64,000 bases of DNA from NCBI RefSeq assembly GCF_006345805.1, contig NW_021836179.1, positions 62,001 through 126,000 of the forward strand. The letters run 5' to 3'. Source of the DNA: Octopus sinensis (Eukaryota). Below, one piece after another: positions 3,842-51,997 of the stretch. Position 1 is the first letter of the stretch. Every line of letters starts with the position of its first letter. The position numbers were made by a program, and so were the translations under genes. The notes beneath the pieces are model-generated. The model saw only the letters and a program-made list of their open reading frames with translations, did not search any database and was not told where the DNA came from.

Positions 3842-5206
3842 ATGCTGACAAATATGCAAAAATCATTGTATCATTATGATATCTGTGGTAAATCAACCAC
3901 TAGAAATGATTTCTTAGATAGACACAAGCGTACTCACACAGGAGAAAAACCGTTCCAGTGTGATATCTGTGGTAAATCATTCTCTCAAAATTGTCATTTA
4001 ACTTCTCACAAACGTGTTCATACAGGGGAGAAACCATATCACTGTGATATCTGTGGTAAATCATACACTCAAAGCTATGACTTAACTAAACACAAATGTA
4101 TTCATTCCAGAGAGAAGCCATTTCGCTGTGATATTTGTGGTAAATCCTTCACACAAAGCAATAACTTAACTAATCACAAACGTGTTCATACAGGAGAGAA
4201 GCCATTTCACTGTGATATTTGTGGTAAATCCTTCACTCAAAGTGGTGGCTTAACTAATCACAAACGTGTTCATACAGGAGAAAAACCATTTCAGTGTGAT
4301 ATCTGTGGTAAATCATTCTCTCAAAATTGTGTGTTAACTACTCACAAGCGTCTTCACACAGGAGAGAAACCATACCATTGTGATATTTGTGGTAAATCAT
4401 TCTCTAAAAATTGTCATTTAACTCCTCACAAACGTATTCATACAGGAGAGAAACCATATCACTGTGATGTCTGTGGTAAATCATTCTCTCACAGAAGTGC
4501 CTTAATTATACACAAACGTGTTCATACAGGAGAGAAGCCATTTTGCTGTGATATTTGTGGTAAATCCTTCACTCAGAGCAATGACTTAACTAAACACAAA
4601 CGTGTTCATACAGGAGAGAAGCCATCTCGCTGTGATATTTGTGGTACATCATTCTCTCACAGAAGTGCCTTAATTATACACAAACGTGTTCATACAGGAG
4701 AGAAGCCATTTCGCTGTGATATTTGTGGTAAATCCTTCACTCAAAGCGGTGGCTTAACTAATCACAAACGTGTTCATACCGGGGAGAAACCATATCACTG
4801 TGATATCTGTGGTAAATCATTCTCTAAAAACAGTAGCCTAACTACACACAAACGCATTCACACAGGGGAAAAACCATTTCACTGTGATGTCTGTGGGAAA
4901 TCATTCTCTGTAAGCAGTAGTTTAATTGGACACAAACGAATTCATACGGGAGAAAAGCCTTATCACTGTGATATCTGTGATAAATCATTCTCTCGAAGCA
5001 ATCACTTAGCTAAACACATATGTATTCATACAGGAGTGAAACCATATCAGTGTGATGTCTGTGGGAAAACATTCTCTGATAGAAGTGCCTTAACTAGACA
5101 CAGACGTATTCATACAGGAGAGAAACCATTTCACTGTGATATCTGTGGTAAATCATTCTCTCGAAATTATCGATTAACTTTTCACAAACGTATTCATACA
5201 GGATAG
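3842..5206 (+). CDS. C2H2 zinc-finger protein, 454 aa, 16 fingers (finger 1 has Cys->Tyr)
   Basis: CxxC-x12-HxxxH repeats with TGEKP linkers fill the ORF; ends at TAG replacing the E codon of a linker. Confidence 0.93.
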
Positions 5207-6344
5207 AGGCCTTTTCGCTGTGATTTCTGTGGTAAATCATTCTCTAGGAAACGTTACTTAACTGGACATGTATCTATCCATACAAGAATTTGACTGTATT
5301 ATTTATCAAATGTCTTTGCAGCACACAGCAACAGACATTTTAAAACCCTTTCTCCTTGTGGGCATTGTCAGTAACTGATGAACCCTTGGTAACATTCATA
5401 ATCATCAGGGTTCCTTTTTGAGGTATTGTTAATGATGCCAACCCTTTTTGTAAGCACTTACCTGGGATACACATAGTTATGCTGGGCACAGGTATTTGTT
5501 AGAATTGTGTGTAGAAAATAATTTGTATAACCATAAATATTGCCACTTTAGGAAGCACTAGATTAGACAATTGTGAGGAGTGGAAACAGTGATGTGCAGA
5601 TATATATAGTTGTGTGTGTAGCAGAATGTAGCAGACACGAGAGGCCCATTGATATTAAAGCTGAAATCTAAAAGAGGAGAAACTTGTGAGGCAGTGCAGC
5701 ATCATGAGAGCAGATGGTGGAGAAATCCAGGTGAACATCTTTTAGAGTAACTGGGTTTTTAGGAAGACACAATTTCTTGCATACTGAAAATATATCTTCC
5801 ATGAAGAAGATTGTGAAATCGTGTGGAGGTGACGTGGTTAAATAAATATGTCTTCAACACTGAAACTTGCTGACTTGGTTTTTATATGTACCTAAATATG
5901 TATGTTTGATTGCTTCTCGTTTATTAATTGCATCCAAGGTGTTTGTTGATGCTGGGCTTTGATCTTTGTTTGCTTGTTTATTTCAGCTTGCTTCTTATTC
6001 CTCTGTGTCAATTTGCTTCTGATGAAGCAATTAGATGAACAAAGCTGCTCTTCTTTGTGTTTCTCTAGGCTGTGGGTTCGTTTAGTATCTCAGATAAAAA
6101 GTTGAATACGTCATTAGAGCACATCCAACCCTAAGCTTAATAAATCTTTCTGGTTTTGTGTCGAGATATTGAAAAGCTGAGGGCCCTGGAAACCCTAAAC
6201 CGTTGCAGTATTGCATTCTTACCCAAGATGGAAAGTCCAAGGTGTTTGGTATGATGTAGTGGCGTTCAGTCCAGGTGTTACTATAGGTTTCATTATCAAA
6301 TTTAGGGGTAGACCTTAAAAACTGTATATATCTATATACAGCGG

Positions 6345-6484
6345 GCTTCTTACAGTTTCCGTCATCCAAATCCACAGACAAGGCTTCGGCTGGCCCGAGG
6401 CTATAGTAGAAGCTTACCCAAGGTGCCAAGCAGTGGAACTGAACCGGGGAACCATGTGATTGATAAGCAAGCTACTTACCACAC
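6345..6484 (-). mobile_element. 5' part of tRNA-derived SINE (also ~12230-12368, ~23720-23860; + at ~49528-49675)
   Basis: Reverse complement of gtgtggtaagtagcttgct...ttgggcaag...ctatagcc...gtggatttgg...gacggaaact, matching full copies at 39051 and 57711. Confidence 0.8.
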
Positions 6485-6554
6485 AATTTTTTTATTAAAT
6501 GCTTCAAATTGTATAGATAACAATTATATAGGAATTTGTTGGGGTAAAACACAA

Positions 6555-48974: not shown

Positions 48975-49430
48975 TAGAACCTACTGAAGCAATCCAGCAT
49001 CCTCACAGTATTACTACAGGTGACAGCGAGGCTAAGGTGTTAAGAAAAACCATGCACCCACACGGGCATCACCTGCCAGTGTTGACAAGAACTTCATGGA
49101 TAATGGCCTAGTCCCTCTGAATGTCTCAAACACCACAAGGTGGAAGAGATAGTTCACTGTCAGGTCCCGATACCTCAGGGTTTTCTTCCATTCGGCTACG
49201 GAAGCAGTGACCCTGCCATTAACTGCAGCATCCAGGATGTGAGAAGGAGCAAAGGAGTAGCAGAGTGTGGCATCCCAAATGAGGCACCTTACCTCTAACC
49301 CAGGCACAGATGACAAGACCATCTCGTCTATTTCTACCACTTGTGAGGAACATTTTCAGGATGAGGGGACAGGAGTTTTGGCTAATTCACACATCTTTAT
49401 TTCCTCATACGTTTTCACAAAGTCTGTGAA
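48975..49430 (-). mobile_element. CRE-clade RLE relic, U6 copy
   Basis: ORF-track 49032-49340 matches 6665-6973. Confidence 0.7.
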
Positions 49431-50714
49431 TTGCCCACCCCTACTCCAGGTAGTGTTTACCCCAAACAAATTCCTATATAATTGTAATCTACACAATTTG
49501 AAGCATTTAAAAAAAAAATTGTGTGGTAAGTAGCTTGCTTATCAATCACATGGTTCCCCGGTTCAGTTCCACTGCTTGGCAACTTTGGAAAGTTTCTTCT
49601 ACTATAGCCTCTGGCCAGCCGAAGCCATGTGAGTGGATTTGGATGACGGAAACTGTAAGAAGCCCGTTGTATATAGACATATACAGTTTTTAAGGTCTAC
49701 CCCTAAATTTGGTAATGAAACCTATAGTAACACCTGGACTGAACGCCACTACATCGTACCAAACACCTTGGACTTTCCATCTTGGGTAAGAATCCAATAC
49801 TGCAACGGTTTAGGGTTTCCAGGGCCCAAAGCTTTTCAATATCTCGACACAAAACCAGAAAGATTTATTAAGCGTAGGGTTGGATATGCTCTAACGATGT
49901 ATTCAACTTTTTATCTGAGATACTAAACGAACCCACAGCCTAGAGAAACACAAAGAAGAGCAGCTTTGTTCATCTAATTGCTTCATCAGAAGCAAATTGA
50001 CACAGAGGAATAAGAAGCAAGCTGAAATAAACAAGCAAACAAAGATCAAAGCCCAGCATCAACAAACACCTTAGATGCAATTAATAAACGAGAAGCAATC
50101 AAACATACATATTTAGGTACATATAAAAACCAAGTCAGCAAGTTTCAGTGTTGAAGACATATTTATTTAACCACGTCACCTCCACACGATTTCACAATCT
50201 TCTTCATGGAGTATATATTTTCAGTATGCAAGAAATTGTGTCTTCCTAAAAACCCAGTTACTCTAAAAGATGTTCACCTGGATTTCTCCACCATCTGCTC
50301 TCATGATGCTGCACTGCCTCACACGTTTCTCCTCTTTTAGATTTCAGCTTTAATATCAATGGGCCTCTCGTGTCTGCTACATTCTGCTACACACACAACT
50401 ATATATATCTGCACATCACTGTTTCCACTCCTCACAATTGTCTAATCTAGTGCTTCCTAAAGTGGCAATATTTATGGTTATACAAATTATTTTCTACACA
50501 CAATTCTAACAAATACCTGTGCCCAGCAAAACTATGCGTATCCCAGGTAAGTGCTTACAAAAAGGGTTGGCATCATTAACAATACCTCAAAAAGGAACCC
50601 TGATGATTATGAATGTTACCAAGGGTTCATCAGTTACTGACAATACCCACAAGGAGAAAGGGTTTTAAAATGTCTGTTGCTGTGAGCTGCAAAGACATTT
50701 CATAAAAAATACAG

Positions 50715-51997
50715 TCAAATTCTTGTATGGATAGATACGTGTGCAGCTAAGTAACGTTTCCTAGAGAATGATTTACCACAGAAATCACAGCGAAAAGGCC
50801 TCTCTCCTGTATGAATACGTTTGTGAGAAGTTAAATGACAATTTTGAGAGAATGATTTACCACAGATATCACAGTGATATGGTTTCTCTCCGGTATGAAC
50901 ACGTTTGTGAGATGTTAAACTATCACTTCGAGAAAATGATTTACCACAGATATCACATTGAAATGGTTTCTCTCCTGTGTGAATACGTTTGTGTACAATT
51001 AAGTTACTTCCGTCAGAGAATGATTTACCACAGATATCACAGCAAAATGGCCTCTCACCTGTATGAATATGTTTGTGAGTAGTTAATCGAGAATTTTGAG
51101 AGAATGATTTACCACAGATATCACAGCAAAATGGCCTATCACCTGTATGAATACTTTTGTGAGAAGTTAATTGACTGTTTGTAGGGAATGATTTGCCACA
51201 GATATCACACGGAAATGGCTTATCTCCTGTGTGATTACGTTTGTGACTAATTAAGGCACTTCTATAAGAGAATGGTTTCCACAGACATCACACTCATATG
51301 GCTTCTCACCTGTATGAATACGTATGTGTGTAGTTAAATTGTTCTTTTCAGAGAATGATTTACCACAGATATCACAGTGATACGGCTTTTCTCCTGTATG
51401 ACTTCGTTTGTGTCCAACTAATTTACTGCTTACAGAGAAAGATTTACCACAGATATCACAGTGAAATGGTTTTTCCCCTGTGTGAATGCGTTTGTGTGCA
51501 GTTAGGCTACTGTTTTCAGAGAATGATTTACCACACAAATCACAATGAAATGGCTTCTCTCCTGTATGAATACGTTTGTGTTTAGTTAAGTGACTGCTTT
51601 GTGTGAAAGATTTACCACAAATATCACAGCGAAATGGCTTCTCTCCTGTATGAACACGTTTGTGATTAGTTAAGTTATTGCTTTGTATGAAGGATTTACC
51701 ACAAATATCACAGCGAAATGGCTTCTCTCCTGTATGAATACGTTTGTGAGTAGTTAAGTCAGAGCTTTGAGAGTATGATTTACCACAGATATCGCAGTGA
51801 TATGGTTTTTCTCCCGTGTGAATACGTTTGTGAGTAGTTAACACACTATTTTGAGAGAATGATTTACCACAGACATCACACTGGAACGGTTTTTCTCCTG
51901 TGTGAGTACGCTTGTGTCTATCTAAGGTAGCACTTCTAGTGGTTGATTTACCACAGATATCACAACGATACCATGATTTTCGCATATTTTTCAGCAT
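50715..51997 (-). pseudogene. C2H2 ZNF gene with a 1-bp deletion in finger 9 (15 fingers if repaired; 248 aa as written)
   Basis: gagaatggtttccacag (~51270) versus gagaatgatttcccacag in U5; downstream fingers continue in another frame to [15 protein letters not shown]. Confidence 0.8.

What the first reader, a model, noticed from the sequence alone, without database searches (positions are those of the whole stretch)
3842..51997. Constant-variable-constant ZNF design built from a shared, recombining finger alphabet
All six complete genes start with the same Phe-less finger ([16 protein letters not shown]) and derive from the same last finger ([14 protein letters not shown]). Between them, 84-bp modules recur in different orders: SHRSALI in U1 (twice), U3, U4, U5; TQSGGLTN in U1, U3, U4; SQNCHLTS in U1, U2, U6; SQNSVLTT in U5, U6; AQ[S/N]KGLTN in U3-U5; a xRSALIS-PTNSxLT run in U2, U5, U6. 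U6 SVSSKLVG looks like a within-finger hybrid of U1 SVSSSLIG and U2 SESSKLVG. The backbone DNA is almost invariant and variation concentrates in the recognition helix (-1 to +6, the established DNA-contact region). Inference: a recombinational generator of new DNA-binding specificities, resembling PRDM9 or KRAB-ZNF turnover but in effector-less genes.
Basis: partly seen in the sequence, partly recalled or inferred. Interest (0 to 1): 0.72.

Follow-up and report, generated by a model that had tools for sequence, protein, structure and literature searches.

The report
Young octopus zinc-finger gene cluster
This is a cluster of seven recently duplicated multi-zinc-finger genes, almost certainly from an octopus, whose finger arrays change by gaining, losing and swapping whole 84-bp fingers and by amino-acid changes at the DNA-contacting positions; this is the ordinary, already described way such gene families evolve, not a new kind of system.

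Summary
Variation does peak at the DNA-contact positions -1, +2, +3 and +6. The estimated pN/pS is about 1.6-1.9 at contact codons, about 0.3 in the backbone and 0.02-0.17 at the zinc ligands.

Several parts of the description are overstated:
- Only U3 and U4 are free of lesions other than the stop before the last finger; U1, U2 and U5 each carry a damaged finger and U6 is frameshifted.
- The last finger is translated only in U2.
- Backbone DNA differs by 11-13% between fingers.
- Finger order is mostly colinear, with one robust rearrangement in U2.
- The proposed hybrid finger is a plain orthologue with two substitutions.
- Only 9 of 53 helix types are shared between genes.

Array restructuring is real. 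U3 and U4 are identical over about 1.7 kb yet differ by three whole fingers, one of them a junction finger, and by a short conversion patch. Flank site patterns fail the four-gamete test.

The best reading is a lineage-specific poly-zinc-finger cluster in an octopod. It evolves by segmental duplication, unequal exchange within the 84-bp repeats, occasional conversion, and diversifying selection on contact residues. The constant end fingers are an edge effect of tandem arrays. "Effector-less" is untested. This is a new member of a known kind, of modest interest.

The parts
3842..5296 (+). U1: 17 finger units. ORF 3842-5206 ends at TAG 5204-5206 in the last linker. An intact but untranslated [14 protein letters not shown] finger follows at 5213-5296. 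Finger 1 (3869-3952) has Cys to Tyr at the first zinc ligand.
10100..11176 (+). U2: 12 fingers plus a 45-nt remnant (10883-10927) left by a 39-nt in-frame deletion. It is the only copy that translates the common last finger (11096-11176).
10463..10798 (+). U2.05-08: amplified TQSNNLTK/N block lying in a different order from its counterparts U1.04 and U6.04, which are 2-3 nt different. This is the one robust non-colinear rearrangement.
20973..22661 (+). U3: 20 fingers. It starts at the second ATG because the first is ATA. A TAG stop (22659-22661) precedes the truncated last-finger remnant.
21408..22163 (+). U3 internal block of repeated SSSNYLTS and SQSSPLTA fingers. Six SSSNYLTS units are identical in DNA, which gives a minisatellite-like sub-array.
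31789..33729 (+). U4: 23 fingers. All 19 reciprocal-best finger pairs with U3 are identical in DNA (the remaining U3 finger, U3.18, carries the conversion patch). U4 differs by 3 extra fingers and one conversion patch.
32728..32811 (+). U4.12 junction finger. It has the 'FR' start of an SQSSPLTA-type unit joined to an SSSNYLTS-type body, as expected at an unequal-exchange breakpoint between nt 5 and nt 14 of the unit. A single point change (A to G at nt 5) is the alternative.
33484..33567 (+). U4.21, with counterpart U3.18 at 22416-22499. The two differ only by a 5-nt patch (nt 27-43 of the unit). Each version of the patch matches neighbouring fingers, which indicates a short-tract conversion within the array.
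41725..43011 (-). U5: 15 finger units. The ORF is 41731-43011. Finger 5 (42565-42648) has His to Asn at the first zinc-binding His. A TAG stop (41731-41733) is followed by the truncated last-finger remnant.
50712..51997 (-). U6: the ORF 51251-51997 has 8 fingers. A 1-nt deletion in finger 9 (51216-51298) shifts the frame. Six further fingers, including the common last finger, continue in another frame to 50712. It is probably a pseudogene or a truncated product.
63813..64000 (-). U7: the last two fingers of a seventh paralogue, cut by the window end. It includes the common last finger (SQKRYLTA variant).
9755..10099 (+). About 345 nt of proximal 5' flank shared by all six genes (shown here for U2). 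It contains a TATAAA motif at -85 from the ATG, an in-frame TGA 5 codons upstream of the ATG, and a polypyrimidine-AG motif ending 2 nt before the ATG.
11194..11928 (+). About 735 nt of 3' flank shared by all six genes at 0.4-2.1% divergence (shown here for U2).

Best explanation
The window holds a young cluster of Krueppel-type C2H2 poly-zinc-finger genes in an octopod genome: four copies on the + strand and three on the - strand, spaced roughly 6-12 kb apart (about 10.8 kb in the best-preserved units).

Each gene is read here as one exon of 84-bp finger repeats and would encode a sequence-specific DNA-binding protein made almost entirely of fingers. The copies arose by local segmental duplication and inversion.

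The arrays then diverged through three ordinary processes:
1. In-register gain and loss of whole fingers, by unequal exchange or replication slippage between the 84-bp repeats.
2. Occasional conversion or crossover within and between paralogues.
3. Point substitutions that are kept preferentially at the DNA-contact positions (-1, +2, +3, +6) and removed from the structural backbone.

The first and last fingers stay in place because they are too diverged from the internal repeats to mispair, and because unique flanks anchor them. This is an edge effect, not a design.

Shown here: the anatomy, the U3/U4 structural differences, the junction and patch fingers, the site-wise substitution pattern, and the incompatible site patterns.

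Inferred: that selection is diversifying rather than merely relaxed; that the proteins bind DNA; and that the driver is changing targets such as transposable elements, as proposed for other metazoan ZNF expansions.
For: Anatomy:
- C-X2-C-X12-H-X3-H units with TGEKP-type linkers at a strict 84-nt period.
- Pfam zf-C2H2 and zf-H2C2_2 hits at E 1e-75 to 1e-105.

Duplication:
- Proximal 5' flanks differ by 0-4.3% and 3' flanks by 0.4-2.1% between units.
- Kilobase-scale blocks are 92-98% identical in direct and inverted orientation.

Array restructuring:
- U3 and U4 have 0 mismatches over about 1.7 kb (5' flank plus fingers 1-11), and all 19 reciprocal-best finger pairs are identical.
- U4 nevertheless has 3 extra fingers, including junction finger U4.12, and U3.18/U4.21 differ by a 5-nt patch matching neighbouring fingers.
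- Their distal upstream sequence is 1.35% diverged.
- The U2 block lies in a different order, with counterparts 2-3 nt away.

Exchange between copies:
- The split (U1,U5), with 9 sites in the 5' flank, is incompatible with the split (U3,U4,U5), with 5 sites in the 3' flank plus the last-finger deletion.
- The finger-1 helix split (U1,U2,U5 against U3,U4,U6) is incompatible with the split (U2,U6).

Selection:
- Contact codons show Nd:Sd of 124:14 against 138:110 in the backbone (Fisher p = 6e-13).
- pN/pS at contact codons is 1.59 (bootstrap 1.30-1.98) on one tree and 1.91 (1.56-2.34) on another. Backbone is 0.29-0.34 and zinc ligands 0.02-0.17.
- In the unambiguous positional orthologues, backbone divergence equals flank level (2.8% first finger, 1.6% last finger) while the helix reaches 13% and 10%.
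- Variable sites are 5/21 against 4/63 (p = 0.04) and 4/21 against 2/63 (p = 0.03), and all helix changes are non-synonymous.
- U6.07 and U5.07 differ by 4 nt, all non-synonymous and all in the helix.
- Penultimate finger U1.16 differs from U2.12 at 8 nt, 5 of them in the helix.

Taxon:
- A 165-nt interspersed repeat at 56946-57110 is 95% identical to a copy in an unrelated Octopus sinensis locus, and further copies and LINE matches are present.
- An Octopus bimaculoides ZNF shows the same CDICGKSFS backbone.

Literature:
- Contact-residue positive selection in poly-ZNF genes (PMC2604467).
- Concerted evolution plus positive selection in PRDM9 arrays (PMC2779102).
- Contact residues are the most variable positions in octopus and other metazoan ZNFs, and ZNF number tracks TE number regardless of accessory domain (PMC10547256).
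- Clustered octopod C2H2 expansions (PMC9795677, PMC12513265).
Against: - Four of six copies carry lesions (a lost Cys, a lost His, an in-frame deletion, a frameshift). Four share a premature stop. So part of the cluster may already be decaying.
- In the most conservative data set, 34 cross-gene nearest pairs, the interval for contact pN/pS includes 1 (0.92-2.76).
- The counting method (Nei-Gojobori on a minimum spanning tree) is approximate, and its edges are not independent.
- Proximal flanks alone give no significant mosaic signal.
- Apart from U3/U4, exact shared runs between paralogues are only 100-290 nt. Exchange between paralogues is therefore historical and rests on few sites. Homoplasy under selection could explain the finger-1 helix pattern.
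- The amplified U3/U4 finger carries Pro at helix position +3. On general helix-stability grounds (not tested here), that may not be a functional specificity.
- No expression, gene-model or binding data were available. Exact-sequence look-ups of U1, U2, U3 and U5 found no called gene with those products, and a search with the N-terminus found no close relative.
Confidence: 0.8

Rival explanations
1. The cluster is a graveyard of decaying pseudogenes. The differences between arrays are neutral mutations and neutral repeat instability, with no selection for new binding specificities.
For: - Lesions in U1, U2, U5 and U6, and a shared premature TAG that removes the last finger in four copies.
- Amplification of a finger with Pro at +3 in U3/U4.
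- Exact-sequence look-ups of U1, U2, U3 and U5 found no called gene with those products, and a search with the N-terminus found no close relative.
- The lower bound of contact pN/pS in the nearest-pair set is 0.92.
Against: - Backbone pN/pS is 0.29-0.34 and zinc-ligand pN/pS is 0.02-0.17, so purifying selection has acted on finger structure during the divergence.
- Open frames of 358-646 codons persist in roughly 35-38% GC sequence.
- Helix changes among positional orthologues are all non-synonymous, while backbone divergence equals flank level.
Confidence: 0.1
2. The locus is a purpose-built constant-variable-constant cassette system, in which a shared alphabet of finger modules is actively shuffled between genes to generate specificities.
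For: - Recurrence of near-identical fingers in several genes.
- One order change, in U2.
- Four-gamete failures.
- The junction finger and the conversion patch in U3/U4.
Against: - Close finger pairs are mostly colinear.
- Only 9 of 53 helix types are shared between genes.
- No long recently shared tracts exist between paralogues other than U3/U4.
- The terminal fingers also vary in their helices. Their constancy follows from their 20-30% backbone divergence from internal repeats.
- The proposed hybrid finger is a simple orthologue.
- Nothing in the sequence suggests a dedicated recombination signal or enzyme.
Confidence: 0.05
3. Part of the pattern is an assembly artefact. U3 and U4 are two haplotypes or mis-assembled copies of one gene, so their difference is allelic or spurious rather than paralogous.
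For: - U3 and U4 are identical over about 1.7 kb. The exact run is at least 1382 nt.
- Distal sequence in the same duplicated block is 1.35% diverged. Repeat-rich regions are prone to false duplication.
Against: - The duplicated block has its own indels: about 850 bp present only upstream of U3, and different 3' distal flanks beyond 23427 and 34495.
- The other five copies are clearly distinct loci.
- If U3 and U4 were alleles, the 20-versus-23-finger difference would be direct evidence of array-length polymorphism. That would strengthen the turnover reading, not weaken it.
Confidence: 0.1

Closest known systems
Lineage-specific C2H2 poly-ZNF expansions of coleoid cephalopods (octopus C2H2 clusters)
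   Same: - Octopod repeat content.
- CDICGKSFS-type backbone, as in an Octopus bimaculoides ZNF.
- Clustered paralogues, as reported for octopus chromosomes (PMC9795677, PMC12513265).
- Contact residues are the most variable positions (PMC10547256).
   Different: - This particular subfamily (KSTTR first finger, [14 protein letters not shown] last finger) had no close relative in the protein database searched.
- The papers consulted do not describe finger-level turnover or selection within a cephalopod cluster.
Mammalian KRAB-ZNF clusters (for example the ZNF91 subfamily on chromosome 19)
   Same: - Tandem segmental duplication.
- In-register finger gain and loss.
- Degenerate fingers.
- Positive selection concentrated at -1, 3 and 6 among recent paralogues (PMC2604467, PMC3126818).
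   Different: - No KRAB, SCAN or BTB domain in the ORFs or in the ten upstream ORF fragments scanned.
- The host is an invertebrate.
- KAP1-type silencing cannot be assumed.
PRDM9 zinc-finger minisatellite
   Same: - Identical repeated fingers, array-length change faster than point substitution, and conversion-like patches in U3/U4.
- Excess amino-acid change at contact positions (PMC2779102).
   Different: - No PR/SET, KRAB or SSXRD region in the ORF.
- Only a sub-block of U3/U4 reaches PRDM9-like repeat identity: 23% of finger pairs exceed 90%, against essentially all pairs in mouse Prdm9.
- This is a multigene cluster, not a single gene.
- The estimated omega of about 1.6-1.9 is far below the roughly 10-14 reported for human PRDM9.
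FiNZ-ZNF of cyprinid fish and ZAD-ZNF of insects
   Same: - Independent, lineage-specific, clustered poly-ZNF expansions.
- For FiNZ, adaptive change in the fingers and a proposed TE-silencing role (PMC10547256).
   Different: Those families are defined by a conserved N-terminal domain. None is visible here.

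Membership tests
Krueppel-type C2H2 poly-zinc-finger proteins | Tandem C-X2-C-X12-H-X3-H units of 28 residues | tested here: met
   103 full 84-nt units in seven genes. TRF finds period 84. Pfam zf-C2H2 hits at E 7.8e-75.
Krueppel-type C2H2 poly-zinc-finger proteins | Conserved TGEKP-type linker between fingers | tested here: met
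   Linker residue counts over 103 units: T 101, G 98, E 91, K 88, P 97. zf-H2C2_2 hits at E 1.8e-105.
KRAB-ZNF | N-terminal KRAB domain (Pfam PF01352), usually on separate upstream exons | tested here: inconclusive
   - KRAB was not among the 25 best of 33 Pfam families listed for the U2 ORF.
- No Pfam hit in the ten upstream + strand ORF fragments scanned (62-112 aa).
- Shorter exons were not scanned. An acceptor-like motif lies 2 nt before the ATG.
- KRAB is not known outside vertebrates (general knowledge).
PRDM9 | PR/SET methyltransferase domain N-terminal to the array | tested here: not met
   The ORFs have only 5-9 residues before finger 1. SET is not among the 25 best of 33 Pfam families listed for the U2 ORF. 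Upstream exons were not fully excluded.
PRDM9 | Nearly all fingers of an array more than 90% identical in DNA (minisatellite) | tested here: not met
   The fraction of finger pairs above 90% identity is 1-11% in U1, U2, U5 and U6, and 23-24% in U3 and U4.
PRDM9 | Excess non-synonymous change at -1, 3 and 6 | tested here: met
   Contact-codon pN/pS is 1.6-1.9, against 0.3 in the backbone.
PRDM9 | Allelic variation in finger number within populations | not testable with these tools
   Only a single assembly is available. The difference between U3 and U4 (20 against 23 fingers) would count only if they were alleles.
Octopod lineage-specific C2H2 expansion | Located in an octopod genome | tested here: met
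   A 165-nt repeat is 95% identical to one in Octopus sinensis CM016876.1, and there are further shared repeats. The species was not determined.
Octopod lineage-specific C2H2 expansion | Clustered recent paralogues | tested here: met
   Seven copies lie within 64 kb, with flanks 0-4% diverged.
Octopod lineage-specific C2H2 expansion | Expression in nervous or embryonic tissue | not testable with these tools
   No transcript data were available. Exact-sequence look-ups of U1, U2, U3 and U5 found no called gene with those products.

The most novel reading that the evidence does not exclude
This young octopus subfamily is an independent, invertebrate counterpart of the KRAB-ZNF and PRDM9 type of evolution. 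On this reading the genes consist of fingers only and have no known effector domain. Their arrays restructure by minisatellite-like instability faster than they mutate, as in U3/U4. Their contact residues are driven by an arms race with octopus transposable elements. If so, the locus would be a convenient natural system for measuring ZNF array mutation rates and target turnover outside vertebrates.
Probability: 0.3. Interest if true: 0.5.

Novelty: new member of a known kind. Interest (0 to 1): 0.3.

Why it matters
This is a clean, small example of how poly-zinc-finger genes diversify. It has seven copies only 0-4% diverged in their flanks, with visible finger gains, a junction finger, a conversion patch, a relocated block and contact-focused amino-acid change.

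It extends to a cephalopod cluster, at single-finger resolution, what is already documented for mammalian KRAB-ZNFs, PRDM9 and fish FiNZ-ZNFs. The cephalopod papers consulted treat only gene counts, clustering, dating and expression.

It does not reveal a new mechanism. Its value would rise if transcript and population data showed that the genes are expressed, lack an effector domain and vary in finger number.

Tried and rejected
1. Identifying the source by protein look-ups.
   - Exact products of U1, U2, U3 and U5 are not on record.
   - A full-length U2 search returned only generic ZNFs of 58% identity or less.
   - An N-terminus plus finger-1 query found nothing close.
   - The neighbouring reverse transcriptase has relatives of at most 61-75% identity, with no informative names.
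   - The taxon came instead from shared interspersed repeats with an Octopus sinensis locus.
2. The within-finger hybrid idea for U6 SVSSKLVG was rejected on the DNA alignment.
3. A single tree for all flanks was my first reading. It was rejected after listing the site partitions, because (U1,U5) and (U3,U4,U5) are incompatible.
4. A test for mosaic structure using only the proximal flanks was not significant, with p = 0.19-0.52.
5. A search for long, recently converted tracts between paralogues found none apart from U3/U4.
Only ten stop-free fragments (62-112 aa) were scanned.
7. The ZNF ORF as part of the downstream LINE was considered, because a reverse transcriptase lies about 2.7 kb downstream on the same strand in the U2, U3 and U6 units. 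It was rejected because U1, U4 and U5 lack the element at that position. The element looks like an old insertion, possibly 5'-truncated (only a reverse-transcriptase domain was seen), that was copied along with the unit.
8. Rfam and tRNA scans found nothing.
9. The 2015 octopus genome paper was not held under the PMC id I tried from memory.

Full report
**What is there**

The window is about 38% GC, has no tRNA or Rfam matches, and is full of retroelement fragments.

- U1 3842-5206 (+)
- U2 10100-11176 (+)
- U3 20973-22661 (+)
- U4 31789-33729 (+)
- U5 41731-43011 (-)
- U6 51251-51997 (-)

The last two fingers of a seventh copy lie at 63813-64000 (-). All arrays keep a strict 84-nt period and hit Pfam zf-C2H2 and zf-H2C2_2 very strongly.

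The genes sit in repeat units spaced roughly 6-12 kb apart, in direct and inverted orientation. Kilobase blocks of these units are 92-98% identical.

**Source organism**

- The exact proteins are not on record. Searches with U2 or its N-terminus gave only generic ZNFs.
- A random 21.7-kb locus of Octopus sinensis shares several interspersed repeats with the window. One is a 165-nt element at 95% identity (window 56946-57110), and there are matches to the local LINE.
- An Octopus bimaculoides ZNF has the same CDICGKSFS backbone.
- I therefore take the window to be octopod. The species is undetermined.

**Checking the observation**

All six genes begin with the DICGKSTTR finger and carry at least a remnant of the [14 protein letters not shown] finger.

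The description is too generous in several respects:
- U1 has lost the first Cys of finger 1.
- U2 has a 39-nt in-frame deletion in finger 10.
- U5 finger 5 has His to Asn.
- U6 has a 1-nt deletion in finger 9, so its ORF stops after 8 fingers and six more fingers follow out of frame.
- The 'common last finger' is translated only in U2. U1, U3, U4 and U5 share a GAG to TAG change in the preceding linker. U3, U4 and U5 have also deleted most of that finger.
- The backbone is conserved as protein, but its DNA differs by 11-13% between internal fingers, against 37-41% for the helix.

**Where variation sits**

Over 103 full units, amino-acid entropy is 2.3, 2.35, 3.5 and 3.0 bits at -1, +2, +3 and +6. 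It is close to zero at the Cys, His and Leu+4 positions.

Counting changes along a minimum spanning tree of the 73 distinct units gave these results:

| Codon class | Result |
|---|---|
| Contact, non-synonymous:synonymous changes | 124:14 |
| Backbone, non-synonymous:synonymous changes | 138:110 (Fisher p = 6e-13 against contact) |
| Contact pN/pS, tree built on all sites | 1.59 (bootstrap 1.30-1.98) |
| Contact pN/pS, tree built on backbone sites only | 1.91 (1.56-2.34) |
| Contact pN/pS, 34 cross-gene nearest pairs | 1.59 (0.92-2.76) |
| Backbone pN/pS | 0.29-0.34 |
| Zinc-ligand pN/pS | 0.02-0.17 |

pN/pS here is scaled to silent divergence over all codons.

The cleanest evidence comes from positional orthologues that cannot be misassigned.
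- Among first fingers the backbone differs by 2.8%, and among last fingers by 1.6%. Both equal flank level. Their helices differ by 13% and 10%.
- Variable sites are 5/21 against 4/63 (p = 0.04) and 4/21 against 2/63 (p = 0.03). Every helix change alters an amino acid.
- The penultimate finger shows the same pattern. U1.16 differs from U2.12 at 8 nt, 5 of them in the helix, at -1, +2, +3 and +6.

So even the 'constant' fingers vary where DNA is read. The pattern is the classical one for poly-ZNF paralogues (PMC2604467) and was noted by entropy for octopus ZNFs (PMC10547256).

My counting method is approximate. I regard diversifying selection as likely, and relaxed constraint at contact positions as not fully excluded.

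**Shuffled, or inherited in order?**

At the DNA level, fingers with the same helix in different genes are close relatives (0-6 mismatches in 84 nt).

Reciprocal-best pairs are largely colinear. The arrays look like different subsets of a longer ancestral order, plus local amplifications:
- TQSNNLTK three times in U2.
- [15 protein letters not shown] and SQNDTLTS duplicated in U5.
- The [16 protein letters not shown] block in U3/U4.

One order change is robust. U2.05-08 lies after U2.03-04, whereas the counterparts U1.04 and U6.04 (2-3 mismatches) lie before U1.12 and U6.06-07.

Only 9 of 53 distinct helix heptads are shared by two or more genes. The suggested hybrid U6.07 is 2 nt from U2.04 and 9 nt from U1.13. 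Val at -1 is also the state in U5 and U1, so a single V to E change in U2 explains it.

**Direct evidence of array restructuring**

U3 and U4 are identical over about 1.7 kb, covering the 5' flank and fingers 1-11. All 19 reciprocal-best finger pairs have 0 mismatches. Distal upstream sequence of the same duplicated block is 1.35% diverged.

Within this identity, U4 differs in three ways:
- It has one extra SSSNYLTS unit. That unit's first codons are those of an SQSSPLTA-type unit, making a junction finger at 32728-32811.
- It has an extra [16 protein letters not shown] pair.
- U4.21 differs from U3.18 by a 5-nt patch (nt 27-43). Each version of the patch matches neighbouring fingers.

So at least two in-register indels and one short conversion occurred in a stretch with no point substitutions.

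Only this sub-block is PRDM9-like in repeat identity. U3/U4 have 16-24 identical finger pairs, and 23% of pairs exceed 90% identity. The other arrays average 76-78% identity (compare PMC2779102).

**Exchange between copies**

- In the 5' flank, 9 sites unite U1 with U5. These include the N-terminal codons (MLTNMQ against MLKNMR).
- In the 3' flank, 5 sites plus the last-finger deletion unite U5 with U3/U4. The two splits are incompatible.
- The finger-1 helix split (U1,U2,U5 against U3,U4,U6) conflicts with the strong (U2,U6) split.

These conflicts show at least one or two crossovers or conversions, or for the helix, parallel change.

The signal is old and thin. Proximal flanks alone are not significant. 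Apart from U3/U4, the longest exact runs between copies are 100-290 nt, as expected for 1-3% divergence.

**How it most likely works**

Each gene would give a DNA-binding protein of 8-23 fingers. The 84-bp repeats and the duplicated repeat units are substrates for slippage, unequal exchange and non-allelic recombination. These processes duplicate, delete, relocate and occasionally patch fingers.

Selection keeps the fold (backbone and ligands) and favours, or at least tolerates, change at contact positions.

The first and last fingers differ from internal ones by 20% and 30% in the backbone and abut unique sequence. They therefore rarely mispair and remain as anchors. That explains the constant-variable-constant layout without any design.

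The likely biological driver, by analogy only, is pursuit of changing targets such as transposable elements (PMC10547256, PMC12513265). Nothing in this window tests that.

**Open points**

- 'Effector-less' is not established. The ORFs have 5-9 residues before finger 1, and an in-frame TGA lies 5 codons upstream of the ATG. However, a polypyrimidine-AG motif ends 2 nt before the ATG. A TATAAA sits at -85.
- None of the ten upstream ORF fragments scanned (62-112 aa) hits Pfam. Shorter exons were not scanned.
- Several copies are damaged, so part of the cluster may be dying.
- The amplified Pro(+3) finger may be a neutral expansion.
- U3/U4 could be haplotypes rather than paralogues. That would make their difference an allelic length polymorphism.

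**Verdict**

This is a new member of a well-known kind: lineage-specific clustered poly-ZNF genes evolving by duplication, unequal exchange and contact-residue diversification, here in an octopod. Interest is modest.

Noticed in passing
13875-15206 (+), 25361-26692 (+), 46405-48039 (-): Three copies of a degenerate non-LTR retrotransposon fragment. The reverse transcriptase (Pfam RVT_1, E 2.4e-28) is split over 2-3 ORFs. Each copy lies about 2.7 kb downstream of U2, U3 and U6 on the gene's strand, so it was copied with the repeat unit. The best database relatives are only 61-75% identical, and many of them carry a PHD domain.
   Followed up: partly
56946-57110; also 37665-37825, 35468-35622, 61942-62090, 56785-56911: A roughly 165-nt interspersed, SINE-like repeat. 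One copy is 95% identical to a copy in an unrelated Octopus sinensis locus (L001:16882-17046). This was the best clue to the source organism.
   Followed up: partly
594-2250, 7589-9367, 16173-17973, 27544-29343, 44312-45722, 52784-54524: A roughly 1.4-1.8-kb element, 96-98% identical between copies, lies 0.7-3 kb upstream of every gene in the same relative orientation. The ORFs of 127-149 aa on its opposite strand have no Pfam hit. It could hold a promoter or 5' exon, or it could simply be part of the duplicated unit or an old mobile element.
   Followed up: partly
21576-21659 and the other SQSSPLTA fingers of U3/U4: The finger amplified 3-4 times per gene carries proline at helix position +3. 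It is one nucleotide away from the SQSSHLTA finger (U3.15/U4.18). A proline inside the recognition helix is unusual and may mean the amplified block is not functional.
   Followed up: no
15629-15915; 19356-19773 and 29590-30002: Non-coding tandem repeats lie between the genes: a 115-bp repeat of 2.5 copies, and a 148-157-bp repeat of about 2.8 copies. The 148-157-bp repeat occurs upstream of U3 and of U4 in opposite orientations.
   Followed up: no
37263-37799: A dense TA/TATACA-type microsatellite with (CA)n that reads as a spurious 178-aa 'YIYIYI' ORF. It lies in the region between the + strand genes and the - strand genes.
   Followed up: no
20964-20975 and 31780-31791: In U3 and U4 the first ATG used by the other copies is ATA, so their ORFs start four codons later (MRKSLYRC). 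This change is shared by the two near-identical copies.
   Followed up: yes
33548-36229 versus 61330-64000 (inverted): The distal 3' flank of U4 is 95% identical to that of U7, not to that of U3. The U3/U4 duplicated block therefore ends near 23427 and 34495, and the cluster is a mosaic of blocks with different histories.
   Followed up: partly
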